A DNA stretch of 64,000 nt. It comes from Penicillus capitatus. Lineage: Eukaryota; Plantae; Chlorophyta. Below, in pieces: positions 16,804 through 64,000 of the stretch; positions within the stretch are counted from its first letter, which is position 1; the number at the start of each line of letters is the position of its first letter. The stretch lies in contig OZ287702.1 in NCBI GenBank assembly GCA_965649825.1, forward strand, positions 734,786-798,785, in the 5' to 3' direction. Both the position numbers and the translations under genes were made by a program. The notes below the pieces were generated by a model, which saw nothing but the letters and a program-made list of their open reading frames with translations, did no database searches and was not told the origin of the DNA.

Positions 16804-16922
16804 TCTGCTGCCTGGTTCTGCGACGGATGCGGTCGATATGATGTGACGTGTCCTGTCAACAGAGGTCGGACATTCCGTTGTCACTATCTGCTTCGGGATA
16901 CCTTCACTGTGCATGTGCATTG

Positions 16923-25309: not shown

Positions 25310-26531
25310 TTAGTTTCGGAGCAATAGACATCGATTGATGGCGTCTCGGTCGAATCTGAAATTGGCAAAGCTCAAACAAGCCACTGCCCCGCCTGCTGTC
25401 TCTGCAGCTGTCTTTGAGGGACTGGTCGATGAGGAAGGAATGTCCTTTATCTTATCGCGGCGTTGCGTCGGGCGATCGACAACAAGTACTTTGGGTTTAT
25501 GGCTCATGATCCATCTTCTAAGCTGTTCAGCGAAAACGTGGACCATGTAGAATCTATGCATCTGGCCCGTCTGGCTGTGATACATCCTGCAAGAATACTC
25601 TTTTGCATTGGGGAGCTCCGAAACTAAGTGCCAAGCCAACGCGCCTATTTCCTGACTCAAACATACGCTCTATCAGAACAACAACAGAAGGATGCGGCCT
25701 GGAACGTGCCTTCCTGGCAAAGGGTTTAAAAGGCATATTCTCTGCGACGTTCTTAATGATGAACAACTTGACCCTTTGCAATCCAGCATGAATCTCTATA
25801 AATTGTCGTTTGTTCAAACGGCTTCTGATATCGAACCCGGTCTCCTCATAAACCTAAGGAACATCGATCCATCTATCCATCTGTCGTGACAGTAACTGCA
25901 CAGGAGACACCGACGCCGTACCTCTCTAATGGCACAATTTTCATCTGTCTCATCCTTCATTCGCTTTCCCCTTGGGAACCCCCAAGCAGCATTCTTGCTC
26001 CATCCTCTTACCAACAGCACTTTATCCATTCTTGGAGAAAGAAGTATGGCACCCATCACTGGTACTGTGTGTTTAAAATCTTGAAATCTCTTCAAGATCA
26101 TTTGAAGATCCCCCTGTCCTTTATCCATTCCTGCAGACGCGTGACAGAGATGGTCTCGCACTTTGTATTGGTCAAGTCCCGGACAGACTTCGAACATCAT
26201 GGAAGCGAATTCTCGTATGGACAAAGACTTCATGCGAGGATGTCTTGGAATAATGTGGTCCTGTGGCGACGGTCCGTTCGTCGATGCACGAACACACGCG
26301 GAACAGCGTGGTCATACCTCATAGTACCAGTGCGCCTCTTCTATCAAGAACAACAGCCGCTCGAACGAACTAACATCATGGACATATCCTTTATACACAA
26401 GCGACGACAAGTTGACGCATCTTACTTCGTATCTTCCAACGGTTTATTGACAACGAAGCGTAAACAGAGCTCTTCGATAAGCTCTCGACTTGGTTTATCA
26501 CGACCTTGAGGACTGTCTGCCATTCTCCCAT
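25310..26531 (-). CDS. DCP2: mRNA decapping enzyme DCP2 (Box A + Nudix); multi-exon
   Basis: Box A IEELCLRFVVN...SFERLLFLIEEAHWYYED, then VPVMGAILL, KVLLVRGW and the Nudix box WGFPRGK...DENCAIREV. Confidence 0.92.
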
Positions 26532-45065: not shown

Positions 45066-48000
45066 ATGTCGGCAACGGCCCCCATCACCGTAAAGGAAGT
45101 TCTGCAGGTGCGAGACCATGCGTTTTCGCCTCAGCGTCGTTGTCTGTTGACGCCGTCGTTGCCTCGGCCTTCCAGTGAACACACGACACGAGTGTCTGTG
45201 TTGTAGTTGACGAATATGCAAGTGCAGATGCAGCACATCTCGTTTAACAATACCACAATGGAGTCCGAAAAATTCATCTGTGTTCGTGAGACGGGTGCGT
45301 CGAATCAGTTGCTCGTCGTCGAAGTCGGCAGCTCGACGCCTCCTGCTCGCCGTCCCATCACGGCGGATTCAGCAATCATGAATCCTGATAGAAAGATCAT
45401 TGCTTTGAAAGCGGCTCAATCGACGGGGGGTGGCAACAGTCTCCAAGTGTTCGATCTGGATAACAAGGCAAAACTCAAAGCCTTTGCTATGAGTGAGAAT
45501 GTCGTTTTCTGGAGATGGATTTCTCCGACCAAAATCGGCATGGTGACGCCGGTAGCTGTCTACCACTGGGATATCGAAGTACGCTTTGTAAAGAGTGAGA
45601 AGAGCTGCTCATGTGTGATGTGACGTGGAGGGATCGAGCGATCCGACTAAGGTTTTTGATAGAGCGCAGAATCTAGCAAACACACAGATCATTAACTACA
45701 AAGTAGATTCGGCAGGCAAATGGTGTGTGTTGATTGGCATCGGACCTGGAACGGCTGACAAGTGCGTGAAAGAGCAAACGTAGACAGAGATGGCTAACGA
45801 AGTGATTTTAGGCCTAATCTAGTGAAGGGATATATGCAACTGTACTCGGTGGATCAGTCCAGAAGTCAAGCCCTGGAAGCCCACGCAGCAGATTTCTCTA
45901 ACATCAAAGTGATCAGATCAATGAATGATGTGACGTTTCAGTGAGAGAGGTGTGGTGCAGTTTCCCGGAAAAGATGCAGCGAGCACGGTGATCTCATTCG
46001 CACAGAAGACCGTAAAGGACGGCCAACTTCTTTCCAAACTCCACGTGATTGAGCTTGGAAGCTCTGGAGGTAAACAGGGCCTCTAAGGCAGGTAGGTGGT
46101 ATGACTGAAATGTCCTTTGTTTCCTTGCAGCACCGACGAAGAAGCAAGCCGAACTGTTTTTTCCTCAGGAGTTTGCCGACGACTTTCCAGTGTCCATGCA
46201 GATCAGTGAGAAGTATGGATTGATCTACGTAGTGACCAAACTCGGAATGCTTTTCGTCTACGATCTCGAAACAGCCACTGCCGTTTATCGCAATCGCATT
46301 AGTCCAGATCCCATTTTCTTGACAACGAACTCTCCGTCCACGGGCGGGTTCATGGCAATCAATCGCCGAGGTCAAGTGCTCCATGCCAATGTCAATGAAG
46401 CATCGATCGTGGGATTCGTCAGCCAGCAGTTGAACAATCTTCCTCTGGCATTGGCCCTGGCCAAGAGAGGCAACTTGCCTGGGGCTGAGAATCTCATCGG
46501 ACAGCAGTTTGAGCAGCTTCTCAAAAATTCGCAGTTCAAAGAGGCGGCAGAATGTGCGGCAGAATCGCCACAGGGTCTGCTGCGTAATGCCGATACCATG
46601 GAGAAGCTCAAGAGTGCTCCTGTTCAGCCTGGCCAGAAATCGCCTCTCCTTGTCTATTTTGGAAATCTCTTGGGACGCGGAAAACTGAATGCCATCGAAA
46701 GTGTGGAACTGGCAAAGATAGTACTGGGCCAGAATAAGAAGGAACTGTTGACCAATTGGTGGAACGATGGGAAACTGGAACCCAGCGAAGAATTGGGCGA
46801 TCTTGTGAAGAACGCAGGAGAGAACGACATCGCACTGAAGATTTTTGAGAGTTCCGGTTCTTCTGCAAAGGTCGTTGTGGCCTTGGCCGAGAAAGGAGAT
46901 TTCCAGCAGCTGATGAGCTACGCCGGCGCTTCCGGACAGACACCCGATTTCATGTTCTTGCTGCAGAGCATGATGATGAACAACCCACAAGGAGCCGTGG
47001 CTTTGGCCAAAATGATCTCCAACCAACCGAATCCGCCCATCGAGATCAACACCATCACAGATCTCTTCCTCCAACGAAACATGGTATGGGAGGACACAGG
47101 CTCCGTGTGAGAAGAGATGGATGGGGTGTGTGGTTTAGGTACGGGAGACGACAGCATATCTGTTGGAAGTGCTGAAAGATGACAAGCCTGAGCACGCTGC
47201 ATTGCAGACAAAGGTGCTGGAGATCAATCTGATTACCAATCCCAATGTCGCAGACGCGATTCTCGGAAACGGATCGCTGTCGCAGTACGATCGGCCAAGA
47301 ATTGCACAGCTCTGTGAAAAAGCAGGCCTCTATATGCGAGCACTCCAGCATTACACGGAGCTGCCTGATATCAAGAGAGTCATTGTCAACACCCACGCCA
47401 TTGATCCAACAGCACTGACACAGTACTTTGGCACCCTGTCTGCCGACTGGGCCATCGATTGTCTCAAAGAGATGCTCACAACGAATCCGCAGCAGAACCT
47501 ACAGCTCGTTGTCAATGTAAGCAATCCTCCTTTGTGGGCCATACCATTGAGAATGCATCAACAGATTGCAAAGGAGTATACAGATCAGCTCACCGCAGCA
47601 GCCATCATCGCTATGCTTGAATCATTCAACAGCTACCATGGACTGTTTTACTATCTAGGATCCTTGATCGCCTTCTCCGAAGATCCCGATGTGCATTACA
47701 AGTACATCGAAGCCGCCGCCAAGATCGGCCAACTGAAAGAAGTCGAACGTGTGACGCGTGAGAGCAGTGTCTATCCTCCAGAGAGAGTCAAAAGCTTTCT
47801 GATCGAAGCCAAGCTTCCCGACTCCCGTCCCCTCATCAATGTGTGTGACCGTTTTGATATGGTCGAAGATCTCACACATTACCTCTATGACAACAATATG
47901 CTGAAGTACATTGAGGGATACGTTCAGAAAGTGAATCCAGGAAAGGGTCCCCAGGTGGTCGGTGCCCTCGTCGATGCAGAAGCACCAGACGACTTCGTTA

Positions 48001-50711
48001 CCAACCTGATCATCTCGGTCCGTGCACTGGTCCCGATCGAAAAACTCGTCGAAGAGATCGAATCGCGCAATCGTTTGAAAATCCTCTCTCCTGTTCTGGA
48101 GTTGCTGATCAGCGAAGGCAGCACAGATGTGCAGGTGCACAGCGCTTTGGGAAAGATCATCGTCGATTCCAACAACAATCCAGAGCATTTCTTGACGACC
48201 AATCCCTACTACGACTCCCTCATTGTGGGAAAGTACTGTGAGAAGAGAGATCCCAATCTGGCTTTCATTGCTTACAAGCGTGGTCTCTGTGATGATGCCC
48301 TCGTCGAATGCACCACAAAGAACTCGCTCTTCAAACTCCAAGCCAGATATATCGTCGAGAGACAAGACAATGATCTGTGGCAGAAAGTGCTCGATCCTGA
48401 GAGAACGCACCGAAAACAGCTTATCGATCAAGTCGTTTCGACAGCGCTGCCGGAATCGACGAATCCTGAACAAGTGTCGACGACTGTGCGTGCTTTCATG
48501 GCTGCGGATTTGCAAGGAGAGCTCATCGAGCTGCTGGAGAAGATCGTTCTGCAGAATTCTGCATTCTCGAACAATTCGAATCTGCAGAACCTCTTGATCA
48601 TCACTGCCATCAAAGCAGACAAAACACGTGTCAAAGACTACATTCATCGACTGGACAATTTTGATGGGACAGCTGTGGCCGAAATTGCCATCACTTACGA
48701 ACTGTATGACGAAGCTTTCGAGATCTATCAGAAATTCGAGCTGAGAGTCGAGGCCATTAAAGTCCTGTTGGAGCATTGCGACGATCTGCACCGTGCATTG
48801 GACTTTGCCACAAAAGTGGATGAGCCATTCGTCTGGTCTGAGCTCGGGCACTCTCAATTGGATCACTCCATGGTCGCTGACGCCATCGTCTCCTACCTCA
48901 GGGCTGAAGACCCCTCCAAGTATACACAAGTCATCGATCAGACAAAAGAAGCCGGATGCTTTGAAGATCTGGTGAAGTACTTGGTCATGGCCAGAAAGAC
49001 AGTAAAGGATGCCGTGGTGGATACAGAGCTCGTGTATGCCTACGCCAGGATTGATCAGCTGGGTCCATTGGAGGCCTTTATCGCCGGTTCTCATCAAGCC
49101 AATCTGCAGTCGTGTGGTGATCGCTGTTTCAAGGAGGCGCTGTACGAAGCCGCCAAGATTCTGTATCAGAAGATTCCGAATTGGGGGCGTTTGGCATCGA
49201 CCTACGTACGTCTGCATCGTTTCCAAGATGCCGTAGACGCCGCAAAGAAGGCCAACTCTGCCAAGACCTGGAAAGAAATCTGCTATGCCTGTGCAGAAGA
49301 GTCTGAATTCCGTCTGGCTCAGCTCTGTGGACTGCATATCATTGTCAATGCTGATGATCTCGAAGAGGTGTCCGAATTCTATCAGAGGCATGGATTCTTT
49401 GATGAGCTCATCTCTTTGATGGAGAGCGGTATCGGTTTAGAACGGGCACATATGGGTATCTTTACGGAATTGGGTGTCCTCTATGCCAAGTACCGCCCGG
49501 CGAAGCTTATGGAACATCTGAAACTCTTCTCCACGAAGCTGAACATTCCAAAACTCATTCACATAACGGAAGATCAACAGCATTGGAAGGAATTGACGTT
49601 TCTCTACGTTCAGTATGATGAACATGACAATGCTGCCATGGTTATGATGAATCACTCGCCCGATTCGTGGGATCATGTCGGATTCAAAGATGTGGCTGTG
49701 AAAGTGTCAAATGTCGAAGTCTTTTACCGAGCTGTCGGATTCTATCTCCAGGAGCAGCCGAGTCTGGTGACAGATCTGCTCAAAGTACTAGAATCCAGAA
49801 TCGACCACGTTCGGGTGGTGGGCATCCTGAGACGTGCCAATGCCATTCCTCTGTGCAAGGAATACCTGTTGGCTGTGCAGAAAGCCAATTTAAAAGATGT
49901 CAATGAAGCAGTCAATGATCTGATGATCGAGGAAGAAAACTATACAGATCTGAAGAGCAGTATCGAAACGTATGATAATTTTGACAAACTGGCATTGGCA
50001 AGTCGATTGGAGTCGCATGAACTGTTGGAGTTCCGAAGAGTGGCAGCCTATCTGTACAAGAAGAATCTCAAATGGCGAAAGGCCGTGGAACTGGCAAAGC
50101 AGGATAAACTTTACAAAGACGCCATGGAGACGGCGGCGCAATCGACCGATTCTGAACTGGCTGAGCAGCTTCTGAGGTTTTTCGTGGCAGAAGGCGAAAA
50201 ACAATGCTTCTCTGCTATGCTCTATACCTGCTACGATCTGATCAAACCGGATGTCGCTATGGAACTCGCATGGATGAATGGACTCACTCAACTTGCCATG
50301 CCCTTCATGATTCAGGTACTCTACGAATGACAAGAAGCAGCCCATAGAGTGAATATACGTTATTCATTGTCTAGACCATGAGGGAACAGACATCGAAGAT
50401 TGACATGCTCATTACGGAGAGGAAAGAAGCGAAGGAGGCATCGAGACTGGCTGCCGAAAGCCAGACAGAACAGGAAGCAGCACGAAATGCTTATCAGACA
50501 CTGATGCCCTTGGCCCTTCCCCCTGCTCAGATGCAGTACCAACATCAAGGTTCGCTTTTCGAGACGGTGTTGGATGTTCTCTATGTTTGGTGATCTAGGT
50601 GCGCCGCCAATGCCTCCTCAGTTCGATCCTCAGTCTGCAGCAGCAGCAGCACAAGGTGGAGCGGTGCCCCCTCAGCCACAGCAGATGTATGGCGCCGCCA
50701 ATCCGTTCTGA
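45066..50711 (+). CDS. CHC: Clathrin heavy chain; multi-exon
   Basis: [76 protein letters not shown] and MPFMIQ. One exon gives a ~1050-aa ORF. Confidence 0.98.
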
Positions 50712-51061
50712 TGCACTGCATTCATCACTCTGTTCTGTATGGGTCGTTTGATCATTGATTTGTGCTGAAAGGAGAGAGACCTGATGCTTTACATGATAGG
50801 ATTCTGTGACACATGGAACGCTGAAATCGTCATCTTCGCTGTTGTCGCGATGTGTCACGTCATTCGCTGCGTTGCGCTTTGAAATCCGTCGCCTATGCTT
50901 GACGACGCAGCCTTGGGGTGCGTTGCTAATCTCATTGGCTTTTTGGTTATGACCCTCGTCATTGTCTACCATCTCATCGCAGCAGACGACAACGGAACGC
51001 AGCCTCGTCGACACTGAGCAGGTGCGTGCACTTGACAATAGCCGCCCATATACATGGCTGA

Positions 51062-51445
51062 ATGGCACGACAGAGAAATCTCACACCTGAATCTCAGATG
51101 CCCTCACACGGACGTTTGAAGCTCAAGGGTGGACTCACTATCAAGGGTGGGAAGATAAAGAAGGCCAAGAAACGGCGGAAGAATACGACAGATCTTGTAG
51201 AAGTGCCATCAGGGGAACAGCAAGTGACGGAGACATCTGAGGGATATGTTCTGCCGCCTCCGGCTGAAGAAGAAGACAGAAGAACGCCTGCCGAGAAGCG
51301 ATACGAAGAGAGAGTGATCCAGAGAGAGGTCGAGAAAGCAAAGACACAGGTGCTGAAATCGCACAGGGAGAAAGTGAGAGATTTCAATGAGTATTTGGCG
51401 CATCTGACCGAACACCATGACATCCCGAAAGTGGGACCCGGGTGA
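51062..51445 (+). CDS. FAM32A-like protein (DUF1754)
   Basis: GRLKLKGG, TPAEKRY, KSHREKVRDFNEYLAHLTEHHDIPKVGPG. The start may be 51098. Confidence 0.9.
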   Translation: MARQRNLTPESQMPSHGRLKLKGGLTIKGGKIKKAKKRRKNTTDLVEVPSGEQQVTETSEGYVLPPPAEEEDRRTPAEKRYEERVIQREVEKAKTQVLKSHREKVRDFNEYLAHLTEHHDIPKVGPG

Positions 51446-51461
51446 AGCTGAAGTATGACTA

Positions 51462-51749
51462 CTGTCCATGATGCGACGTGATGTGACGTGCGCAATGGAG
51501 AGAGACAGCAAGTACTGTCCATGTTGGCGTCTGTTAAAACAGTCATTGGTTTCTGTGAACGTCACGTCAGCAAGTAGCACATGGAGATCAAATGTAACGT
51601 GAAGGTGGCGAGAATCGACAAGGCCTCTGTCTGTTTGCACTTCGAAATACCGGGAACAGCGCCGAAGGCTCTTTGGAGAAGATTTGGTTATGGAAAAGAG
51701 CGATTTAGCAAAGAGGGACTGCTGTCCATGACGCGACGTGATGTGACGT
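51462..51749. repeat. 28-bp direct repeat pair (51462-51489 and 51722-51749) rich in ACGT/TGACGT cores
   Basis: CTGTCCATGA(T/C)GCGACGTGATGTGACGT, 27/28 identical, 260 bp apart. Confidence 0.8.
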
Positions 51750-51829
51750 TGCGTGCGGTGTGACGCGACGTGCTTTGCGGATATCATCATCTATGCAACA
51801 GCCGTTGTTCGGTTCGCGATCTCGTCACA

Positions 51830-54015
51830 ATGCCTCTCGCATGCTTGGATGGCTCTAAGCGTTCAGATGGATGTTTTGGAGCACTGTTTGGCTTTTTCCA
51901 TTCTTTCTGCACGTTTTCCACGGGGAAGTCGGTGGTCATCAAAGATTGGCGCCTGGTAAACCGCACTTACCGTAGTCACGATGACCTTGTCTTCGTAGGG
52001 GACCATCTTCCGATTGCTGCAATTGGCGATATTCTTCTATATCCTATTTAATGTTGTCAACGAAGGCTCCTATATGATTCAAGAAGTGCACACCCATAGC
52101 CGTTTTAACCGCCATGTGAACCGTCATGGTATTAGGTGCCAAAGGGAGTCGTCAGTCCAGTGATAGAGGTGTCGAGAAGAGAGAGACGAGCGAATCTCAA
52201 AACACAACTCGACGTACCAATCCACCCCTCATCAAACAGAACATCCAAAACTCTTTCTTTTGCAGCAATATGACAACAATACATTGCCCTACTGCAAGAC
52301 GAAAGGGGTAGCCTATGAGTACGATTACAGAGATGTGCACTACGGGAAATTCCAGTACGCTTCGCCTGAGGGAATGGAGTCAAAATGATTGATCGTGTCA
52401 TGTGGTTTAGATGTATCGTCATGGATGTATTGGAACATCCGCAGCAAGGCGAAACAAAGTTTTTTCTTACGACGTACATGCGCATCGACAAGCTCTACTT
52501 CGTCGATGTGCCGAAGTCATTGGATTCGTGTCCAGATGCGGCAGGTGTGGATGAGATCAGAGATGATGCCAGGAAGATCGGTGTCAACCTTGTCGGCGTC
52601 TGTCTTTTCAACACGGTCGATCAGTACTTTGCTATCAACCCTGAAGACATTCCACTTGTGAGCAAACGGACCGGATATGTTGTGGTGGAACGTGGGAGTA
52701 CGCTGTGTCGTATTTTAGGCCTTCCAGCACTCCTATTACACATCGGTAGTCGACAAAACTGGTGTACTGCCTTTAACAGTTATCAAGGCAAAGGACTTTG
52801 ATGGTGGAAAAGTGTGGGCGTTTGAGGATGAGCCTGCACGCCTGACAATGGCTAGATTGTTGAAGCTCAGTGGAGTGGATTTAGATAAGCGCCTGGATGA
52901 ACAGCCCAATAGCCAAGGATTGGAACCCTCAGCTCGAGACAACGACACAGTTGTCTATCCTTACGCCCGTCTCTCGGGAGTGACGTTGCTGATGGAGTTC
53001 AAGTACTACACCCGGGCGTTAGCACCGGAGCCCTACAACAGGGCGAGTGGCCGAAAATCAAAAGACACCATCTGCGTTGTGGAAGTGTCCCCGCAGTTCT
53101 CGTGGTCATCTGAAGGATCGGACATGCATCGGCTGATGAACGACGGAGACGATCCGTTTTTCGTTGATCCCGAACGCAAGCGTCGAAGAGATGGCAAGAA
53201 TGTGCTTGAGGGAATCCAAGTGGACTTCCAAAGAAATGGCATTGAGCTCAGATTCCAGATCGCAGGTTCGACCGATCGAAACACGGGTGTCTGCAAGAGT
53301 GAATGAGTGTCTCAGGAAACATGGGGCATTTTGATTTCTTTTCTCTTGTGGATGCACTGGTGGCAGGTGCTGTGCTGTTGGGTATAGCCCAACTCGTTGT
53401 CTCATACATTGCCGTTCATGCACTGGGCCTGACATCTGTGCTATATGCCGAACACATGGAGGAGTCTGTCAACTGGAGAATGGACTATGCCCGATTTGCA
53501 GTCCAGTCTCTCGTTGCTGGAATGGCGTTCAGGAGGTACGACGAAGACGGATCGGGAACTCTGAATCGCCAAGAAATCTACAAGCACTTGACCACTATTT
53601 TTCAAGGCGAAAGAGAGAATGGTCAGATTTTGAGTCTGGACGAGGTAGCATGCCTGTCCGACTTCTTTCTACGCCACAGACAGTTGACAGAAGGCGAAAG
53701 CGAGCTCGAAGAACAATCAGAAGGCGTAAGTAAATTACCTATTCTGTATCTCGCTATCGCATCTCTATGTCGCAGTCGTCTGGTAATGTGGAGATTACAA
53801 CAGTTAACATGGCTGACTGGATCGATACCTTTACAGAAGAGAAGGTGCAGATCAGTTCCCTGACGCGTTTGGTCAAGAGTGAATACAATGATCCGAAGAC
53901 CATCGAAATCCTTCTCGCCCTCGCCCAGGTACCTCGTGTCAAACATCGTGGGAGAACTGTGAGATGTGTACCTGAAGGGACGGGCGCTTCGCACTGGACC
54001 TCAAGTAGCGATTGA
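51830..54015 (+). CDS. P2X purinoceptor-family cation channel with C-terminal EF-hand; multi-exon
   Basis: N-terminal FSTGKSVVIKDWRLG (YxTxK-type motif), TM1 IFRLLQLAIFFYILF, ectodomain TLPYC, LLKLSGVDLD and RLSGVTLLMEFKY, pre-TM2 RNGIELRFQIAG..GHFD, TM2 SLVDALVAGAVLLGIAQLVV, then DEDGSGTLNRQE. The 3' end is approximate. Confidence 0.8.
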
Positions 54016-55056
54016 GCAGCTTTCAAAATCACAAGGGAGTGATGCAGCATTCGACGAATAGACGATCTAATGTAGAGCCAGCCAGCCCGCAAAAAAAAAA
54101 AAAATAAACCTCATCTAATCTGAAGGACCCGTTCCTCTGGAGTTCTAAACTTGCTGTTTAGACGATGATTTGAGTGGTCTATTTCTATGTTTGTGTTTCC
54201 TTAGTTTCATCAGTGATTTGTGATTTCTGCTGCAAACGTCGTTTAATAGATAAGAATGAAGGAAGAGTGGGCTTTGTTCAAATAAACCAGTAGCAGAGTG
54301 CTGCTTCTCTTGAGCACTGCTGTGGCAATGGTGCTGACAAGGGTCAAGATTACGTATCAATCTGGAATCTACACTCCTGTTTCAATGGAGGAGATAGCGA
54401 TTCTTGTTCAATAAATACACTTGTTTGCTCTTCTGTTTTTCTTCTGGCTTCGTGTTCTGTCGTTCCTCGACATAAAACTTCATCTACATTCAAAACTCCT
54501 CAGAGTTTTTTTGTCACAAAGATATCGATGCCGTGCTGGTTGTTGCCGATTCGTGTGTTCTGTCTGGATAGAGTCATATTGCTGTTGTTTTTGTCATTGA
54601 GGAAGTTAGAGAATGCAACGAACAGTCGGATGACACACAGTTCACGTCATCCGGCCTCGTCTATGCATCGCTGTTTTGACGACTGTCGAAGATGGTTCTC
54701 ACCTGTGCAAGACTGCAGAGCTGTTCTGCTGGTTAAGAGATGTCTCAGAGAGCCTTTAGTTGTCGTTGGTATATTGACATCTGCACTTGTGTCGGACTTG
54801 CTGCACTTGCACATTCATTGGTATCGGCCTGAACAGATTCCCATCCATTAAGAAGAATCTTCCAATTGTTCCATCTGTCCGATTTCAAAATCGCCGTAGC
54901 TGTTATCTGCGGTTGTTTATCACTGCATCCCGTTCGTAAACCCCTTTCGACGCATTCGACGTTCTAAAGCTTAAACCTATTTCGAAAAACTCGCCTTCAA
55001 ACTGCCGTTCGCAGAACGACTCCTGGAGCAACGACGAACTGCTGGACTGCAGAGAA

Positions 55057-58000
55057 ATGGGAGACGGTTCTCTCTCCGGGGCGGAGCGTTGCGAAAGACT
55101 AAAAGAAACGCGGAACGTGCTTGGATTTGACAAGACGGTAAAACAGATTGAACACATCTGCGAGTGCTGACACGGTGGGCGTTTCTCAGTATGTTCGTTC
55201 TGTGGCTTTCGAAGAAGGCGCATTCGCCGAAATGGGCGTGGAAAAGCCGTTCACGAAGAGTGTAAATGGAGACAGCGCCTATCCAGCGTCAAAGGTGATG
55301 AATACTTTACAAGGGACTCACATTTCAACATCGCGTACGACAGGTGTGGGATCCTCTGAGTGTCACCAGTCCATTGCAGTCCTACATTTCACGTCGTAAT
55401 AGCCGTGGGCAGGCTGCAGATGTCTTCGCCAAAGGATACGACCGCAAACGAGTCGTACTTCCGAAACCTCGTGTGCAGATGGCTGCCATCCCTAAAAGCT
55501 GGTACTCGGTCAACAGGAGTTCATCACCATTCCATCCAGCAGACGCTCCCTTGTCTCCAACTATTCTATCCGCATGCAATAAGGTATTTTGCGTTTGCCG
55601 TGTTTCGGATTTTAGCTCTCTTCTCAGGGTAACTTGGTTGAAATCTGCGAGGTCGACATAGAGGGACACGGCCTCGTGAAGATCTTTCAAGTCGGAGAGA
55701 GGTCTGCAGGGAAGATTGTGGAGCGAACGGGATTGTTCACGAGGACGTCGACTGTTCCACTCTACTGCGAGGGTCTGCGCGACCCAGAAGAAGAGATGAG
55801 AAGCCTAATGTACCTGTCACCAAGTGCTCTGCGTCGCCGTGTCCACATCCTGTCCGATCGATCTCGCGGCGTCGAGAGATTCGTCTTTGTGGGAAAGCTA
55901 GGGCTTTGGGGCGGCGGGAACGGAGAAGCCTCGTCCAGCAGCAATGCTCATGGACACCAGACCACTGTCGAAGGGGGTACTTCTCTCTGGGCGACAAGAA
56001 GGGCTTTGACTCGCATGGACAGCTCGATCATCCGAAGGACTCTTATCGGAAGAGGATACTGCAGTCTCGAAGAAGTAGTGAAGGCGTTCAACCAAGAGGA
56101 CGATGCCGAACTGAGACTTGGGTTGGCGGAAGTAATGCGGAGAGTCCTCTACGCCTTCAACGACATGCCTGTGCGAGCCGTGACAGACAATCGTGGTGCA
56201 GTGGTCCGAGAGTACCTTGCCATGTGCAGACTCGACAGCTCGGGCGACGACCATCTGCTTCTTCTTAAGGACTTCTTCGACAGCCTTCGCGACAAGCTGT
56301 GCAACGACGCGCTCAACAACAGATATCTGATCGAGGCAGTGGAGCACGCGCTTCAGAGTATCGACGCCGAGGTCTTCGCAGACGATCCAAACTGTCTTCT
56401 CCAGCTGGCTCAGTTTCTGTTAGATGCCTTCGATCCGCAGAGAATGAGCTTCTCGAAGGAGATGTTCCCAGTGCAGTGCAGTGCTCTGCACGTTGTGCAT
56501 CAGTGTCTGAGAATCCTCTTTGACATCGGCTCGGGCAGCTGGGATCCGAACAGACCCGGCGGGTTGTACGCCAAGTTCAAGAACTGGAGTCAGAGAGTGA
56601 TCGACGCTGCGGGGTACTATCCGGTAAAGTACCAGGCGATGCTGGTGCAGCAGAGCTTAACCTTCTTGCAGTCGTCGAAACGAAGCGTCCGCATCACAAA
56701 CAATGCAAGACGAATTGCCAACCTCGTGTACGGCACGGTGGGAATATGTCAAGCGGTGCGAAATGCCGTCCTTCTGGACTTCGATCTGGGGAATGCGGAG
56801 TCTACGGCGAGTGCACTGGCCCGAGCGAGAGAGAACCGAATCGTTCGCGAAGAGCAGTGGTACAAGTGCCTCTACGCCCTTGACGCTGTGCGCTTCGCGG
56901 CCATTGAAGATCCGTCCGCATTTGGACAATTCAAGGATCTCCTCTCATCCCTCGTACTCGAGGGAGAAGTATCTAACCAAGAACGATGCAAGGTTCTGAG
57001 GTTCGGCGTTGTGGAGATGTTGACCAGCCTCGCCATCCATGGGAAGGACGACGCTGTTCGCTGTATGAGCGCCGAGACTCTGGCAGGCCTCGTCGAACGA
57101 ACAGACAAGTGGGACTGGTTGAGCGACCTCGATCTCTTCTTGGAAATGCTCGACAATCTAACAGAGCTCATCGCCCGAGGCCGCGAGCCAGAGCAGCACA
57201 AGGCGCATGAAGCAATAGAGAAGCTGGCGTCGAATGCGCACAACGGGTATTGTGAGGGAGTGCTGTCAGAGTGGTTGGGAGGAAAAACGATCAAGGAACG
57301 GATCCAGTCAGTCCCGTCCCTCCAGACGGAGGCAATTGGCAACAGGCTGTTTACTCAAGTGTGGAATAGTCTCAAATACGAATTATTGCATGTATCAACC
57401 GAAGTTCATTCTCTGCTGAAGAAGCATCACTGTTTATTCGCACCACTCGTGGTTCGCCATTTCGCCGGGAGGCGGCGCGAATACAGCGAACTCATTGAAG
57501 CATTCGAATCGAGCGTGGAAAGAGTTATCGTCAAGGCAGTTGTTGGCCCGGGCGGCATAGGAAAGTCTCAGCTCGCTGCAAAAGTGTTCGAACATCTCAG
57601 GAGCACGGGGAGCTACGTCAACGATTTCTGGATCCCTTCAGACTCAGCGGAGGCCATCTCGGTTGCTTTCTTGCAAATCGCAGAATACTTGGAACTGCCG
57701 ACGAACACCGAGATCCCGAAACTGGTCAGACGTATCCACGAAGAGTTGAGGAAATCGCGCAATCTCTTCGTCTTTGACGATGCGCCAGATCTCGAATCGA
57801 TTTGCGATTATTTTCCTCTCACAAATGGACATGTTATCGTTACGACGAGAGACAGTGGAGCAAGAGACTGGTCAGATGACACGATTCGACTCGATCCATT
57901 CAACAAACTCGAAGCACGAGATCTGGCAGAGAAGTTTGGATTCGGCGATCAATCGCACGCGAAGGATTTGGAGGAGCTGTTCGATGCGTTACCGCAATAC

Positions 58001-60454
58001 CCGCTAGCCCTCATGCAGTTCCTCTCGATGTTAGAGAACGATGAGTTGTCAAGCCCTGCCGAATGGCTAACTAAATTGCGACAATTCGACGCCTCGAAAA
58101 AAGAAGCCGAAGTCATAAAAAAGCTTTCTGCAAGGGAAGATAGTAACGGAGTAAGAGGAATAGTTTTCGTGTTCAATTCGAGCATACACAGAATATCAAA
58201 AGAGCCTGGCAATCTGGGATCGCGTTCACTCGACCTTCTCGCCAAGTTAGCACTCCTCGACCCAAACGGAGTGCCCATCGAGTGGGTGTACAAGTGGATC
58301 GGATCTGAGGATCTGCAACAGTCAAGAATGACGATGCGAAAATCAGTAAGGCTCCTCGAGCGCTTCTCCCATGTCTCGTGGGATAGAGAAAAAAAGCAGA
58401 TCTTCATTCACAGCGAGACACAACTTTTAGCGCGACACATCCTGCTGAGCTTCGGAGAGAGTATTTGTGACACGAAGGAAGCAAGCGAAGAACAGATAAA
58501 CAGAAAAGTCGCGGATCACATTGAGATCATAGTGCATTCAATCCGCCATTACATTGAAAACTGGAGAACTGATCGTTCGAACAGAGATCTTTGGACCTCA
58601 CTTGCCCAAAACCTATCGTCGCTCAAGAAGAAGTCCGAGAATTACATGGATATCAATCAGCAGTTTAAGCTTTTCGGGCATATGTCAAGAGCGTACGAGG
58701 GAATGTGCATGTTCCGTAAATCGCTTTCATACGCTCAGAAAGCGTTAGAAATTTGCGAACATTTTCACGGAGACGCGGACCACCTGGAACTTGTTGAGTG
58801 CATTAAGAGCTACGCCGTCGGACTTTCGAGAACAGGAAGAGACAATGATGCCCTGCCGCTCTTTAAGAGGTCTCTCGAGATGTGTGAGCGCCTTCACGGG
58901 GATGGGGACAGCCCGGAACTCGTCCATTACATCAAGAGCTACGCCGCCGGACTCGAGCGAACGGGGAGAGTCAACGACGCGCTGCCGCTTTACAAAAAAG
59001 CTCTCGAGATGTGCGAGGACCTTCACGGCGATGCGGATCATCCGGAACTTGTCGAGTGCATAAACCGTTATGCCGTCGGACTCGGGCGAGCAGGGAAGGA
59101 CGACAAATCTCTGCCGCTCCGCAAGAAAGCTCTCGAAATGTGCAAGCGCCTTCACGGCGACGCGGACCACCCGAAATTTGTCGAGTGCATCAAGAGCTAC
59201 GCCGTCGGACTTTCGAGAACGGGAAAGGACAACGAAGCTCTGTCGCTCCTTAAGAGAGCTCTCGAAATGTGCGAGCGCCTTCACGGCGACGCGGACCACC
59301 CGAAACTCGTTGAGTGCATCAGAAGCTACGCCGTCGGACTTTCGAGAACGGGAAAGGACAACGAAGCTCTGCCGCTCCGCAAGAAAGCTCTCGAGATGTG
59401 CGAGCGCCTCCACGGTGCCGGGGACCACCCGGAACTCGTCGAGTGCATCAAGAGCTACGCCGTCGGACTTTCGAGAACGGGAAAGGACAACGAAGCTTTA
59501 TCGCGCATTAAGAGGGCTCTCGAGATGTGCGAGCGCCTTCAGAGCGACGTAGACCACCCGAAACTCGTCGAGTGCATAAACCGCTACGCCATCGGTCTTT
59601 CGAGAACGGGAAAGGACAACGAAGCATTGCCGCTTTATAAGAAAGCTCTCGAGATGTGCGAGCGCCTTCACGGCGACGCGGACCACCCGGAACTCGTCGA
59701 GTGCATAAACAGATACGCCGTCGGTCTCGAGCAAACGGGAAGGGATAATGAAGGTTTGCCGTTCTGCAAGAAAGCTCTCGAGATGTGCGAACGCCTTTAC
59801 GGCGACGCGAACCACCCGGAACTCGTCGAGTGCATAAACCGCTACGCCGTCGGTCTTTCGAGAACGGGAAAGGACAACGAAGCATTGCCGCTTTACAAGA
59901 AAGCTCTCGAGATGTGCGATCGCATTCACGGCGACGCGGACCACCCGGAACTTGTCGAATGCATAAACAGATACGCCGTCGGACTTTCGCGAACGGGAAA
60001 GGACAATGATGCCCTACCGCTCTTTAAGAGCGCTCTCGAGATGTGCGAGCGCCTTCATGGCGACGCGGATCACCCGAAACTTGTCGAATGCATGAACCGC
60101 TACACCATCGGACTTAGGCGAACGGGAAGGGACAACGAAGCTTTGCCGTTCTACAAGAAAGCTCTCGAGATGTGCGAACGCCTTTACGGTGATGCGGACC
60201 ACTCAGAAGTCCTCAAATGCATAAACCGCTACGCAGTCGGACTTTCCAAAGCGAAAAGATACAAGGAAGTTCTGCCACTTTACAAGAGGGCTCTCGAGAT
60301 GTGCGAGCGCATTCATCGCCACGCAGACCACCCTGACCTCATCCAATGCATCAAGACCTACGCCATTGGACTCTTAAAAGCGGGAAAGTTTATTAAGGCG
60401 TGCTCTTATTGGAGAAGAGAAAGAGCTATGCGTAAACGACTTAATAACAGATAA
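55057..60454 (+). CDS. NLR-like STAND protein: uncharacterised N-terminus + ARM-like domain + NB-ARC + TPR repeats (exons 55057-55137, 55190-55294, 55344-55583, 55628-60454)
   Basis: P-loop GPGGIGKS (57545-57568), Walker B LFVFDDA, sensor-1 VIVTTRD, GLPLA-like QYPLAL, WH-like LALLDPNGVP, then 13 x 43-aa TPRs. Three phase-0 GT-AG introns (52, 49, 44 nt) join an ATG at 55057 to the 4.8-kb terminal exon. Confidence 0.88.
58778..60454 (+). repeat. Coding tandem repeat: 13 units of 129 bp (43-aa TPR, consensus DHPELVECINRYAVGLSRTGKDNEALPLYKKALEMCERLHGDA)
   Basis: Unit starts are 129 bp apart (58778, 58907, ...). DNA identity between units is high, and the last unit is a degenerate cap. Confidence 0.95.
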
Positions 60455-61269
60455 GAACTGAATACGTTTCTGGTTGATTGCCTTTTGTTCTCTCTCTTAA
60501 GTTGTTTTCGTTAGCTTTCATGAGTAACGCCGTGTCTGCGTTAAGATGCGCATGTTGCCTAAATGGCCACAATCGAGTTCTATCTGTATGTCACACCTTT
60601 TGCAAGTATTGATTACGTGTTTTATACGGATAGCTAACCGCCCTCTAACGTTGTGTAATCGTATCGTCCGTTACTAGTAATTGCCCGTTGATGAACTTGG
60701 TTTTCCTAGGTTAAACTGAAGAAAAGTAAAGTGCCTTGCAGTTTATCTCCGACGTCACTGTCGTGGTTACCCGCTGTCTCGCAGCTGACCAAGAGGAGGC
60801 GGAGACCGACGTGCATGTATTCGATGCGACATGTTCATTCGTTCCCTCTCCATAGATTCCGAATCACAGGAGTTGATAGTCCTTTAATCAACAAACCTTC
60901 GTCATCGTTCACGTTTGCGCGCGTTTGTGCCGCAAGTTGGCGACACGACGAAAGCAATAATGATGAATTGATAAGACGCGTCAAAAGAGACAATGTAGAT
61001 AACCGGAGGATTGCAAAGGTTGTCAATTCAACAAAACGTTCATATACCAAGGTCATGATGCGTCTCTGAAGCTAGCTGTGAAGAGTCTAGTCCCCAAATA
61101 CTCTTTTTAGAATGCTTGCGTGTGTTCTTAATTCGCCGACTGCGCATGGTACATGTTGATTCAGACGCTATGTAAATGAGAAAGTTAATTGTATATATGC
61201 AGGTGACCTAGACTAACAGCGAAGGTTAAACAGTTGATCTTTGTTTTTGACCAGTTCGCACGTGCTCAG

Positions 61270-61428
61270 TGTCGTGTGCGCGCGGCGCGCTGCGCCGGGC
61301 GCCGTCGGCGCGCATGCGGATGCGAGGCGGAGGCAGAGAAACGGCGGGCGAACGCGGATTAATGATGATTGTTCGATGTCTTCGATTCTGCAGACTAGTC
61401 TCTGATTTGCCGTCGTTTCAGTCCATCA
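61270..61428 (-). repeat. LTR copy A (159 bp, TGATGG...ACGACA)
   Basis: Starts immediately after the PPT (61429-61437) and ends in CA at 61270, where similarity to flanking DNA stops. Confidence 0.75.
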
Positions 61429-61449
61429 CTCTTCCCTGCGCAACTTCAC

Positions 61450-61920
61450 CGTCGTCGAGTAGATGCGAATTCTGCTTGAGTAACAAGACCCTTCAGCTGT
61501 CTTCTTCACCGATCGCTGATCGTCTGAATACTGCGTTCAATTAGGCCATTGGATTGTGGACTATAAACCCCAGACGTGAGGTGTGACATGTCCTGTTCTT
61601 CACACCATGTCGATACGCCAGTCCACAAAACACCTGCGCATTATCTGCATAGATCAATCGTAGAGGAGACTCGGCTGTCGTATTGTCTCGAATCCATGCA
61701 CTAACCGGCAGAATTGATCGAACTCTTCCGCATCTTGAGCATCAGTTACCCATTGCCACTCGTCAGATGGCTGAGATTCTGATGTACACCAATGCACGCA
61801 ATGCGCTTTCTCGATCACCGTGCGACTTTTTGTTGTCAGATGATCGAGACGTAGCGCGTCCGCTGCGTCTTCGTATCCCAGAAGTTTGCGATCTTCGATT
61901 GAGTGACAGTATACGAGCAT
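61450..61920 (-). pseudogene. Decayed retroviral-type (rve, DDE) integrase fragment, unit 1
   Basis: RLIYADNAQVF (second Asp motif), frameshift, TWCEEQDMSHLTSGVYSPQSNGLIERSIQT (YxPQSNG..ER with catalytic Glu), then an in-frame stop. Confidence 0.75.
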
Positions 61921-62591
61921 GGCAGATAGTTCGCTCTGCGAAACGAATCCAGATTTGCGTCACGATCGCTTGCAGATGGCCCGCCTATTGGCAGGTCATC
62001 GGCACACTGAATGTGTTACTGCTTAGGACACGAGTGTTCCAGAGCCGATGCTACTGCAGTCGGCGTCGTCTCCGCGCAATTGACGTTTCCCGTAGCTGCC
62101 TTCCTCGACTTCCGGCCATCCGTACTCCCAGTCGGCATATCTGATCCGTCAGTCGATGCGTCTCGGTCGGCGTTTGCGCGGACGAAAACGACATCCACTG
62201 CCGATTGTTCCGAAACAACTGCACGACTGACTGGCGACCGAACTTCGCCGAAATCGACCCCATGTTTCCAGATTTACGCCGCAGCACCACATGCCGCTGT
62301 GAGACTGACCACCGCAACTTCACGAAGGCTGTGAGCGACGACGCAGTCGCATCGACGAAACCCTCGGCGAAGCTGAGATGCGGTCAGCGGAGTCAACCAC
62401 CGCAGACAAAGGCATCGTCACATACCATCCGTACTTGTGCCGGTCCAGGGACCTCAACTGGAGGCATCTGAGGCGCGGACACGGACGACACAGAGTCGGA
62501 TGTGTTTGTAATGTTTGTCCGTGCGGTCGGTGGCTAGTCTGCACGGAACGGCTTCGCTTTCCACCAGCAGCAGTAGAAGAACGCCTACGAC

Positions 62592-62603
62592 GCTCCGAAA
62601 CCA
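62592..62603 (-). promoter_or_regulatory. Primer-binding site-like TGGTTTCGGAGC (tRNA-iMet-like); second copy 63911-63922
   Basis: Lies 3 nt after the LTR CA end, begins with TGG, and matches the plant/algal iMet PBS TGGTATCAGAGC at 10/12 positions. Confidence 0.6.
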
Positions 62604-62606
62604 GAC

Positions 62607-62751
62607 TGTCGCGTGCGCCGGGCGCCGTCGGCGCGCATGCGGATGCGAGGCGGAGGCAGAGAAACGGCGGGCGAACGCGGATTAATGATGATTGTTCGAT
62701 GTCTTCGATTCTGCAGACTAGTCTCTGACTTGCCGTCGTTTCAGTCCATCA
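62607..62751 (-). repeat. LTR copy B (145 bp, shared between adjacent units)
   Basis: Near-identical to copy A except for a ~14-bp deletion in the GC-rich end. PPT at 62752-62760 on one side and PBS at 62592-62603 on the other. Confidence 0.75.
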
Positions 62752-62768
62752 CTCTTCCCTGCGCAACT

Positions 62769-63240
62769 TCACCGTCGTCGAGCAGATGCAAATTCTGCCT
62801 GAGTAACAAGACCCTTCAGCTGTCTTCTTCTCCGATCGCTGATCGTCTGAATACTGCGCTTCACCAGACCGTCGGATTGCGGATGATATACCCTATGACG
62901 TGAGGTGCGACACGGGCTGTCGCACCATGTCGATACGGCAGATCCACAAAACACCTGCGCATTATCTGCATAGATCAATCGTAGAGGAGACTCGTCTGTC
63001 GTATTGTCTCGAATCCATGCACTGACCGGCAGAATTGCTCGAACTCTTCCGCATCTTGAGCATCAGTTACCCATCGCCACTCGTCAGATGGCTGAGATTC
63101 TGATGTACACCAATGCACGCAATGCGCTTTCTCGATCACCATGCGACCTTCTGTTGTCAGATGATCGAGACGTAGCGCGTCCGCTGCGTCTTCGTATCCC
63201 AGAAGTTGCGGTCTTCGATTGAGTGACAGTATACGAGCAT
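62769..63240 (-). pseudogene. Decayed rve integrase fragment, unit 2
   Basis: IYADNAQVFCGSAVSTWC...YHPQSDGLVKRSIQT. The catalytic Glu is replaced by Lys and there is a small deletion relative to unit 1. Confidence 0.75.
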
Positions 63241-63925
63241 GGCAGATAGTTCGCTCTGCAAAACGAATCCAGATTTGCGTCACGATCGCTTGCAGATGGC
63301 CCGCCTATTGGCAGGTCATCGGCATACTGAATGTGTTACTGCTTAGGACACGAGTGTTCCAGAGCCGATGCTACTGCAGTCGGCGTCGTCTCCGCGCAAT
63401 TGACGTTTCCCGTAGCTGCCTTCCTCGACTTCCGGCTATCCGTACTCCCAGTCGGCATATCTGATCCGTCAGTCGATGCGTCTCGGTCGGCGTTTGCGCG
63501 GACGAAAACGACATCCACTGCCGATTGTTCCGAAACAACTGCACGACTGGCTGGCGACCGAACTTCGCCGAAATCGATCCCATGTTTCCAGATTTACGCC
63601 GCAGCACCACATGCCGCTGTGAGACTGACCACCGCAACTTCACGAAGGCTGTGAGCGACGACGCAGTCGCATCGACGAAACCCTCGGCGAAGCTGAGATG
63701 CGTCAGCGGAGTCAACCACCGCAGACAAAGGCATCGTCACATACCATCCGTACTTGTGCCGGTCCAGGGACCTCAACTGGAGGCATCTGAGGCGCGGACA
63801 CGGACGACACAGAGTCGGATGTGTTTGTGATGTTTGTCCGTGCGGTCGGTGGCTAGTCTGCACGGAACGGCTTCGCTTTCCACCAGCAGCAGTAGAAGAA
63901 CGCCTACGACGCTCCGAAACCAGAC

Positions 63926-64000
63926 TGTCGCGTGCGCCGGGCGCCGTCGGCGCGCATGCGGATGCGAGGCGGAGGCAGAGAAACGGCGGGCGAACGCGGA
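63926..64000 (-). repeat. LTR copy C (partial, runs off window)
   Basis: Same sequence as the copy B end, followed on the minus strand by the PBS at 63911-63922. Confidence 0.7.

What the first reader, a model, noticed from the sequence alone, without database searches (positions are those of the whole stretch)
61270..64000. Head-to-tail array of miniature LTR retroelements sharing LTRs, with a retained integrase relic
Seen: at least two full ~1.32-kb units plus a third LTR. The minus-strand order is LTR(TG..CA), PBS, internal region, PPT(AGGGAAGAG), LTR, with each internal LTR serving both neighbours. Established: such arrays are described for plant TRIM/Cassandra elements, which lack coding relics. 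Here the LTRs are tiny (145-159 bp, GC-rich end) and the interior keeps a decayed DDE integrase core; I recognised no RT, RNase H or gag. Inference: a deletion-derivative family is being amplified in tandem and may be turning into a retrotransposon-derived satellite (possibly centromeric or subtelomeric).
Basis: partly seen in the sequence, partly recalled or inferred. Interest (0 to 1): 0.7.

Follow-up and report, generated by a model that had tools for sequence, protein, structure and literature searches.

The report
Tandem dimer of small LTR retrotransposon
A small, non-autonomous LTR retrotransposon of a green alga sits here as two head-to-tail copies sharing a middle LTR and flanked by a single 5-bp target-site duplication; this is a closed single insertion of a kind already known from plants and flies, not a growing satellite.

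Summary
On the minus strand the region reads LTR, internal region, LTR, internal region, LTR, with a 1.32-kb unit and 96.4% identity between units.

An identical ENA contig (L001) runs 1,235 bp past the window end. It shows that the array stops after the third LTR, and that the whole structure is flanked by a perfect 5-bp duplication, CTCAG.

A second locus in the same organism (L003) carries a single copy of the family. It has the same TG..CA ends, the same PBS-like motif, the same PPT and its own 5-bp duplication (ATCAC). Removing that copy restores a 520-codon reading frame.

The integrase relic is statistically real (best non-self hit E = 1.2e-8; every hit scanned carries an rve domain). 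No RT, RNase H or gag is supported.

The host is a green alga, and the site lies between genes.

The inference of ongoing tandem amplification into a centromeric or subtelomeric satellite is not supported. [quoted passage not shown]

How the dimer formed is unresolved: unequal exchange between LTRs, or integration of a dimeric cDNA. A 70-bp mosaic patch shows that a third, more diverged family member took part.

The parts
61265..61269 (.). Left copy of the 5-bp target-site duplication, CTCAG
   Evidence: The same pentamer follows the third LTR at L001 16667-16671, window-equivalent 64071-64075.
61270..61428 (-). LTR-A, the 3' LTR in element orientation. 159 bp, TGATGG...CGACA. It keeps a 14-bp GC-rich segment that LTR-B and LTR-C lack.
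   Evidence: Alignment of the three LTRs shows 2 substitutions and one 14-bp indel against B and C. Both LTRs of the L003 copy also have the 14 bp.
61429..61437 (-). Polypurine tract AGGGAAGAG of unit 1, directly upstream of LTR-A
   Evidence: Read from the sequence. The identical motif lies before the 3' LTR of the L003 copy.
61429..62606 (-). Internal region 1 (1178 bp), with no intact long ORF
61506..61750 (-). Integrase-core relic of unit 1, running from the helix before the second catalytic D (..IYADNAQ..) to the E (..YSPQSNGLIER..). It is broken by frameshifts.
   Evidence: Phmmer against PDB: all 60 listed hits are retroviral integrases or Pol, best E 0.0017. Exhaustive HMMER against 1.84 billion representatives: best non-self hit E 1.2e-8, and all 10 hits scanned carry rve. 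Pfam alone gives only rve_3 at E 0.008.
61534..61607 (-). Mosaic patch. It holds 23 of the 45 differences between the two internal regions. The unit-1 version is the outlier and is closer to the integrase consensus.
   Evidence: Fisher p = 1e-17 for clustering.
62592..62603 (-). PBS-like 12-mer TGGTTTCGGAGC of unit 1, 3 nt after LTR-B
   Evidence: The same 12-mer lies 2 nt after the 5' LTR of an unrelated mini LTR element in L002 and in the L003 copy. The matching tRNA was not found.
62607..62751 (-). LTR-B, the shared middle LTR, 145 bp
   Evidence: 100% identical to LTR-C.
62752..62760 (-). Polypurine tract AGGGAAGAG of unit 2
62752..63925 (-). Internal region 2 (1174 bp). It is 98.6% identical to the internal region of the L003 monomer and 96.3% identical to internal region 1.
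62769..63073 (-). Integrase-core relic of unit 2 (..IYADNAQVFCGS..YHPQSDGLVKR..). The catalytic E is replaced by K at +35 from the D.
   Evidence: The same version forms one 156-aa ORF (P0036) in L003.
63911..63922 (-). PBS-like 12-mer of unit 2
63926..64000 (-). LTR-C, the 5' LTR in element orientation. The window holds the first 75 of its 145 bp. It is completed in L001 16522-16666 and followed there by the TSD CTCAG.

Best explanation
This is one insertion of a roughly 1.5-kb non-autonomous LTR retrotransposon family in a green alga. [quoted passage not shown]

Each unit keeps only the parts needed in cis: 145-159-bp LTRs with TG..CA ends, a PBS-like motif and a PPT. It also carries roughly 1.2 kb of non-coding interior that includes a decayed integrase core. 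It must therefore be copied and integrated by proteins from an autonomous element that was not found.

Shown: the structure; the single 5-bp TSD; a second copy, a monomer with its own TSD, at another locus; and the integrase homology.

Inferred, for how the dimer arose: I judge unequal exchange between the 5' and 3' LTRs of one inserted element (between sister chromatids or homologues) most likely, at about 50%. In this reading the exchange followed a 14-bp deletion in the 5' LTR, which the middle LTR then inherited. Short ectopic gene-conversion tracts from more diverged family members came later and produced the 70-bp mosaic patch.

The array is closed. It is not an expanding satellite.
For: Structure and end of the array.

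Perfect 5-bp TSD CTCAG on both sides of the whole structure, and none between the units.

Second locus, L003: a monomer with identical termini, identical PBS-like and PPT motifs and the TSD ATCAC. Removing the element restores a 520-aa ORF across the site.

Integrase relic.

No intact ORF and no RT or gag signal.

For unequal exchange:
- The middle LTR carries the derived 14-bp deletion of the 5' LTR in its 3' part, which is the part this model derives from the 5' LTR.
- Outside the patch the two internal regions differ by 2.0%, comparable with the 1.4% between the outer LTRs.
- Clustered patches of change also occur in the 3' LTR of L003, so patchy conversion seems to recur in this family.

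The same mechanism is the standard one in the literature (PMC5932611 Fig. 1A; PMC11899658 discussion).
Against: The two internal regions are no closer to each other than to the copy at another locus. Outside the patch the unique sites number 13, 9 and 8, and inside the patch internal region 2 equals L003.

Differences are unevenly spread: 5 in the first 600 bp against 13 in the next 400, p = 0.007. That looks more like variation among source elements than decay after duplication.

LTR-B and LTR-C show 0 differences where about 3 would be expected at the divergence of the interior.

The two substitutions that set LTR-A apart (A at position 23 and A at position 155) are states also seen in the L003 LTRs. 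This suggests inherited family polymorphism rather than new mutations.

Only three internal regions and five LTRs were available. No reads, no whole genome and no autonomous partner could be examined.
Confidence: 0.5

Rival explanations
1. The identity of the element is the same, but the dimer was made during retrotransposition and integrated as a dimer. An abnormal extra strand transfer between two non-identical co-packaged RNAs, or read-through transcription of a one-LTR circle or of a tandem source, would give a dimeric cDNA. A single integration event would then insert it and create one TSD.
For: There is a single TSD and no internal one.

Internal regions 1 and 2 are not each other's closest relatives. 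Region 2 is 98.6% identical to the L003 copy and 96.3% to region 1. The 70-bp patch separates region 1 from both.

The differences concentrate in the unconstrained 3' half, as expected for variation among source RNAs.

The states that distinguish LTR-A from B and C also occur in L003 LTRs.

The mechanism has been proposed for Triticeae complex elements (PMC1950507) and is left open for rice (PMC11899658).
Against: In the simplest template-switch scheme the two outer LTRs should be identical and the middle one different. Here the 5' and middle LTRs are identical and the 3' LTR differs. That requires plus-strand priming from the internal PPT.

Outside the patch the three internal regions are roughly equidistant, which also fits a burst followed by early unequal exchange.

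No second dimer of the family was seen.
Confidence: 0.35
2. One reading: a deletion-derivative family is being amplified in tandem and is becoming a retrotransposon-derived satellite, possibly centromeric or subtelomeric.
For: A dimer is the substrate from which unequal exchange can build longer arrays (PMC5932611). Cassandra and other TRIMs do form arrays of 12 or more units (PMC7215508, PMC4717578).
Against: The array ends after the third LTR and unique sequence follows.

It lies between genes, 815 bp from the stop codon of an NB-ARC/TPR gene, in a window with uniform composition of about 50% GC and many ORFs.

There is no other copy in 64 kb.

Only one other ORF of the family exists in its 90% cluster among about 15 billion proteins, and that one belongs to a monomer.
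Confidence: 0.05
3. Assembly artefact: a single element was duplicated by mis-assembly of a repeat.
For: I could not inspect reads. The window and L001 may derive from the same reads, since they show 0 mismatches.
Against: The two units differ at 45 columns, including a 70-bp patch with about 30% divergence, and LTR-A differs from LTR-B and LTR-C by a 14-bp indel. An artefactual duplication of one element would give identical units.

The whole structure is 2.8 kb. If, as the contig naming suggests, this is a long-read assembly, that is far below the read length.

The structure has intact junctions and a perfect TSD.
Confidence: 0.03
4. Two independent insertions of the family lay close together. 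Recombination between them then deleted the intervening DNA and left three LTRs.
For: This is the older textbook explanation for elements that share an LTR (background of PMC1950507). It would explain why the two internal regions differ.
Against: The outer flanks would then carry the left TSD of one insertion and the right TSD of the other. Here both are CTCAG, a chance match of about 1 in 1024.
Confidence: 0.02

Closest known systems
Tandem LTR-retrotransposon insertions with shared internal LTRs and a single TSD (rice TLI1 and 266 others found by IDENTAM; also Arabidopsis, almond, cotton): PMC11899658
   Same: LTRs and internal regions alternate, the internal LTR is shared, a 5-bp TSD flanks the whole structure, and there is no TSD between units. 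The internal regions are similar but not identical (94% in TLI1, 96% here). The same open question applies: unequal recombination or a complex insertion.
   Different: The rice examples are mostly full-size gypsy or copia elements of land plants. This one is a 1.5-kb non-autonomous derivative in a green alga.
Tandemly arrayed TRIMs (TA-TRIMs, 'L3I2' to 'L5I4'; Zma-SMART, Wukong): PMC4717578, PMC4528315
   Same: The elements are very small (LTRs about 150 bp), non-autonomous and located near genes. The L3I2 arrangement flanked by TSDs is the same.
   Different: Classical TRIM interiors hold little beyond the PBS and PPT and are usually under 1 kb in total. Here the interior is about 1.17 kb and keeps a recognisable integrase-core relic, so it sits between a TRIM and a larger deletion derivative.
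Cassandra TRIM long tandem arrays: PMC7215508
   Same: A non-autonomous LTR element in head-to-tail arrays with shared LTRs.
   Different: Cassandra LTRs carry 5S rRNA sequences, and its arrays reach 12 or more units near 5S rDNA. Here there is no Rfam match at all, so no 5S, and there are only two units.
Drosophila LTR-retrotransposon tandems formed by LTR-LTR ectopic recombination: PMC5932611
   Same: The mechanism is a dimer with a shared LTR, seen as possible raw material for satellites.
   Different: Those were inferred from read-pair junctions in populations. Here a single assembled locus is resolved to the base.

Membership tests
LTR retrotransposon (order LTR, class I) | Direct long terminal repeats ending 5'-TG...CA-3' | tested here: met
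   There are three LTRs here and two in L003. All read TGATGG...CGACA.
LTR retrotransposon (order LTR, class I) | Target-site duplication of 4-6 bp flanking the insertion | tested here: met
   CTCAG/CTCAG around the dimer and ATCAC/ATCAC around the L003 monomer.
LTR retrotransposon (order LTR, class I) | Primer-binding site complementary to a tRNA 3' end, next to the 5' LTR | tested here: inconclusive
   TGGTTTCGGAGC starts with TGG, lies 3 nt after the LTR, is identical in all three units, and is shared with an unrelated mini LTR element in L002. No tRNA gene was present in the 107 kb available, so complementarity could not be checked.
LTR retrotransposon (order LTR, class I) | Polypurine tract directly upstream of the 3' LTR | tested here: met
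   AGGGAAGAG abuts the LTR in all three units.
LTR retrotransposon (order LTR, class I) | Copies at unrelated loci (evidence of mobility), with an empty site | tested here: met
   The L003 monomer lies on another contig. Removing it restores a 520-aa ORF. The orthologous site of the window insertion in the related genome (L002) was too diverged to align.
LTR retrotransposon (order LTR, class I) | pol-derived sequence (here the integrase DDE core) | tested here: met
   The relic profile gave 15 hits at E <= 1e-3 among 1.84 billion representatives. One is the window's own 88-aa ORF (P0021) and the best of the other 14 is at 1.2e-8. All 10 hits scanned carry rve. Every listed PDB hit is a retroviral integrase or Pol. 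Only the stretch from the second D to the E is supported. The first-D region is not.
Autonomous LTR retrotransposon | Intact gag and pol (PR, RT, RNase H, IN) reading frames | tested here: not met
   The longest sense ORFs are 156 aa or shorter. Pfam finds nothing on the raw frames. A YADD/LLGY stretch that I took for an RT remnant is not significant.
TRIM (terminal-repeat retrotransposon in miniature) | Very small LTR element with short LTRs (about 100-250 bp) and no coding capacity | tested here: met
   LTRs are 145-160 bp, the monomer is 1,491 bp, and there is no functional ORF. It is borderline in total size and keeps a pol relic, unlike classical TRIMs. The usual size limits I give are from memory, not from a paper read here.
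Tandem LTR-RT / TA-TRIM (L3I2) | Three or more LTRs alternating with two or more internal regions, shared internal LTRs, and one TSD around the whole | tested here: met
   Definitions are in PMC4717578 and PMC11899658.
Cassandra | 5S rRNA-derived sequence with a pol III promoter in the LTR | tested here: not met
   No Rfam family reaches its gathering score in the window, L001 or L002.
Satellite DNA / centromeric retrotransposon array | Long arrays (tens to thousands of units) in gene-poor regions | tested here: not met
   There are two units. Unique sequence and ORFs lie on both sides.
Ty3/gypsy versus Ty1/copia | Domain order (IN after RT/RH, or before it) and RT phylogeny | not testable with these tools
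   Only an IN core fragment is left. Its best hits include both gypsy-type proteins (RVT_1, Integrase_H2C2) and copia-type proteins (RVT_2, gag_pre-integrs).

The most novel reading that the evidence does not exclude
The dimer was integrated as a dimer. It would have been reverse-transcribed from two non-identical co-packaged RNAs of the family, one of the L003 type and one carrying a more integrase-like patch.

That would make this locus base-level evidence for a question the rice study left open: that tandem LTR retrotransposons can arise during retrotransposition rather than by later recombination. It would come from a lineage, Chlorophyta, for which the plant, Drosophila and bivalve papers I consulted describe no TRIM-like elements or tandems. 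I did not search for green-algal reports specifically.
Probability: 0.3. Interest if true: 0.45.

Novelty: new member of a known kind. Interest (0 to 1): 0.27.

Why it matters
It is a clean, fully bounded example of an L3I2 tandem LTR retrotransposon, with both flanks, the TSD and a monomeric sister copy. It comes from an intron-poor green alga, which extends a structure documented mainly in land plants and Drosophila.

It also shows that a 1.5-kb derivative with 145-160-bp LTRs has been mobile in this genome. One copy interrupts a coding frame.

The mosaic pattern makes the locus a usable test case for how such tandems form. For genome annotation, it should be labelled as one non-autonomous LTR-retrotransposon insertion, not as a satellite or a gene.

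Tried and rejected
1. Pfam on the raw frames of the unit gave nothing. On stitched relics it gave only rve_3, at E 0.008-0.024.

2. The word-indexed protein search with a stitched RT+IN relic found no hit at E <= 1e-3.

3. I suspected an RT remnant (HIQYADD....KLLGYEDAADALRLD..). It is not supported by the PDB search, by Pfam or by pairwise BLASTP against three Pol proteins, with E between 0.39 and 1.9. The same stretch could instead be the first-D part of the integrase core. That is not significant either.

4. An empty site in the syntenic locus of the related genome (L002) could not be shown. The intergenic DNA is too diverged to align beyond about 100 bp.

5. Two JGI metagenome scans found no real relative. 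The 25-mer of PBS plus leader gave 0 hits. P0036 gave only one GC-rich contig, matched in a low-complexity frame, which I judged a false positive.

6. No tRNA genes occur in the window, L001 or L002, so the primer tRNA could not be named. A literature search for the PBS string gave nothing relevant.

7. Near-matches to the PBS elsewhere in the window (11247, 25311, 25615) show no LTR context.

8. No close autonomous partner appeared. The best non-self integrase hit scores only 51 bits and looks unrelated to this family.

9. The bacterial-type promoter and terminator scan is not informative for a eukaryote.
Full report
**Observation**

The last 2.7 kb of the window is a head-to-tail repeat. The repeat finder reports pairs spaced 1319-1323 bp apart at 94-100% identity. 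BLAST of unit 62606-63925 against the window finds a second copy at 61286-62606 (96.4% over 1323 columns) and the start of a third at 63925-64000. It finds nothing else in 64 kb. Chance is not an issue.

**Getting past the window end**

The neighbouring NB-ARC/TPR gene (ORF 55634-60454) led, through its own protein P0001, to ENA contig ctg312795_19x of analysis ERZ25074695, fetched as L001.
- L001 equals window 47405-64000 without a mismatch over 16,596 bp, and runs 1,235 bp further.
- In L001 the repeat stops 149 bp into the third unit.
- Read at the base level, the structure in window-equivalent + strand coordinates is: CTCAG | LTR-A 61270-61428 | internal 1, 61429-62606 | LTR-B 62607-62751 | internal 2, 62752-63925 | LTR-C 63926-64070 | CTCAG, followed by unique sequence.

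**Anatomy**

The element reads on the minus strand.
- The LTRs are TGATGG...CGACA and have a GC-rich 3' part.
- Three bases after each upstream LTR lies TGGTTTCGGAGC.
- AGGGAAGAG abuts each downstream LTR.
- LTR-B and LTR-C are identical (145 bp). LTR-A has 14 extra bases, flanked by GCGCA repeats, and two substitutions.
- There is no long sense ORF, and Pfam finds nothing in the raw frames.

**A second copy elsewhere**

The one ORF of the array that the collection's gene caller had called is P0021 (window 61654-61920, minus strand). It shares its 90% cluster with one other protein, P0036. P0036 is encoded on another contig of the same sample, ctg330881_13x, fetched as L003.
- L003 carries a monomer of the same family: 5' LTR 9155-9314, internal 9315-10488, 3' LTR 10489-10645.
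- It has the same termini, the same GTC plus TGGTTTCGGAGC, the same AGGGAAGAG, and its own 5-bp duplication, ATCAC.
- Joining its flanks while keeping one ATCAC gives a continuous 520-codon minus-strand frame of a beta-helix/PMP-like repeat protein. The element therefore inserted into a coding sequence.
- This settles the LTR boundaries, the TSD length and past mobility of the family.

**The integrase relic**

A profile of the two stitched relic versions (alignment A2) was searched exhaustively against 1.84 billion representatives.
- It gave 15 proteins at E <= 1e-3. The top one is the window's own ORF, and the best other hit is at E = 1.2e-8.
- All ten hits scanned carry the rve integrase core at the matched place.
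- Against PDB sequences, every listed hit is a retroviral integrase or Pol, best E 0.0017. The alignments run from the helix before the second catalytic D through the catalytic E.
- The D and the E are 35-36 residues apart. The E is kept in unit 1 (..NGLIER) and is K in unit 2 and in L003 (..LVKR).
- The hits include both gypsy-type and copia-type proteins, so the superfamily is open.
- Support stops there. The first-D region, and a YADD/LLGY stretch that I took for an RT remnant, are not significant in any test.
- No close autonomous partner turned up.

**Host and context**

The clathrin heavy chain in the window is 70-73% identical to the best named hits, which are Trebouxiophyceae, and 90-92% identical to unnamed EukProt and Logan entries. 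The host is therefore a green alga.
- Genes are dense and have few, short introns. One example is a 55-nt intron at 47084-47138.
- The insertion lies 815 bp downstream of the NB-ARC/TPR stop codon, in DNA without long ORFs.
- The same ENA sample holds a related genome at 344x coverage. Its syntenic locus (L002) has no match to the one unit sequence searched there, an 18-base string from the left junction. No full comparison with the unit could be run, because L002 was not available to scripts. I saw no unit-like sequence in the stretch read, 14850-17400.
- L002 carries a different 844-bp mini LTR element with the same 12-nt PBS-like motif. Its intergenic DNA is too diverged to define an empty site.

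**How the dimer formed**

The matching outer TSD rules out two neighbouring insertions that later recombined (chance match about 1 in 1024). The absence of an inner TSD rules out a double insertion. Two models remain, as in the rice study (PMC11899658): unequal LTR-LTR exchange after a single insertion (PMC5932611 Fig. 1A), or integration of a dimeric cDNA (PMC1950507).

The data point both ways.
- For exchange: the middle LTR carries the derived 14-bp deletion of the 5' LTR in its 3' part, as that model predicts. Interior divergence outside the patch (2.0%) is similar to that of the outer LTRs (1.4%).
- Against a simple exchange followed by random decay: 23 of the 45 interior differences sit in about 70 bp (p = 1e-17). 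The first 600 bp are much less variable than the next 400 (p = 0.007 for the pair, 0.0014 for three copies).
- Also against it: internal region 2 is closer to the L003 copy (98.6%) than to its tandem neighbour (96.3%). Outside the patch the three copies are equidistant, with 13, 9 and 8 unique sites.
- Also against it: the two substitutions that mark LTR-A are states also present in L003 LTRs.
- Either the two units came from different RNAs, or short ectopic conversion tracts from diverged relatives have been pasted in. The 3' LTR of L003 has a similar 20-bp cluster of changes, which makes recurrent conversion plausible.
- I put unequal exchange plus conversion at about 0.5 and a dimeric cDNA at about 0.35.
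- Either way the patch shows that at least one more, diverged family member exists. Its integrase motif is closer to consensus than that of the copies seen here.

**Comparison with what is known**

[quoted passage not shown] It is also the tandem LTR-RT insertion of rice and other plants (PMC11899658).
- Drosophila LTR elements commonly form such tandems (PMC5932611).
- Cassandra forms long arrays but is defined by 5S sequences in its LTRs (PMC7215508). These are absent here.
- The element is TRIM-like in LTR size and in lacking coding capacity. It is larger than classical TRIMs and keeps a pol relic.
- It is a new member of a known kind.

**Verdict**

Its evolutionary inference does not hold: tandem amplification towards a satellite at a centromere or subtelomere is not supported at this locus. 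Interest is modest. The main value is a base-resolved, fully bounded example in a green alga, with a sister monomer and a mosaic pattern that could help decide how such tandems arise.

Noticed in passing
window 55634-60454 (+), repeats 58764-60372: A 1,606-codon intron-free ORF encodes an NB-ARC domain followed by TPR_10/TPR_12 repeats. The repeats are written as 12.5 tandem 129-bp (43-aa) units at about 80% identity, an NLR-like STAND protein in a green alga. Many paralogues at 52-90% identity exist on other ENA contigs.
   Followed up: partly
L002 15842-16685: The related 344x genome has, downstream of the orthologous NB-ARC gene, an unrelated 844-bp TRIM-like element. It has 148-bp LTRs about 85% alike, a 548-bp interior and a TAAC duplication. 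Its 12-nt PBS-like motif, TGGTTTCGGAGC, is the same as that of the window's element.
   Followed up: partly
L003 8462-11520 (-), element at 9155-10645: The monomeric copy interrupts a beta-helix/Chlam_PMP-like repeat protein gene. Removing it and one ATCAC restores a 520-aa frame. Neighbouring genes are of the same family.
   Followed up: yes
LTR positions 23 and 155 (element orientation) in window LTR-A/B/C and in the L003 LTRs: The same two sites vary (A/G) both between the LTRs of one element and between loci, in recombinant combinations: C and B are G..G, A is A..A, L003 5' is A..G, L003 3' is G..A. Position 155 is in a CpG. Position 23 is not. The pattern is unexplained: recurrent mutation, ectopic conversion, or something systematic in LTR formation.
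   Followed up: no
window 25308-25322 (+) and 25613-25626 (-): A 14-bp inverted repeat, CTTAGTTTCGGAGC, has arms about 290 bp apart. Twelve of the 14 bases resemble the PBS motif with one mismatch. With at most one mismatch, 0.41 matches to the 12-mer are expected by chance in the window. Three such near-matches occur besides the two real PBS sites. It could be a small TIR element or chance.
   Followed up: no
ENA analysis ERZ25074695 (L001/L003 versus L002): One sample holds two related green-algal genomes. One is at 344x, with a 6.9-Mb contig that is also in NCBI. The other is at 13-19x. They are syntenic around clathrin and NB-ARC but only about 90% identical in the NB-ARC protein, and their intergenic DNA cannot be aligned.
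   Followed up: no
database protein P0022 (not in the window): The best non-self hit of the integrase relic is itself three tandem repeats, of about 300 aa period, of a gypsy-type integrase fragment. It is an unrelated example of a retrotransposon piece in tandem array.
   Followed up: no
window 47084-47138: A 55-nt GT..AG intron splits the clathrin heavy-chain gene (..LFLQRNM | [11 protein letters not shown]..). It shows that the genome has short spliceosomal introns even though many genes are single long ORFs.
   Followed up: partly
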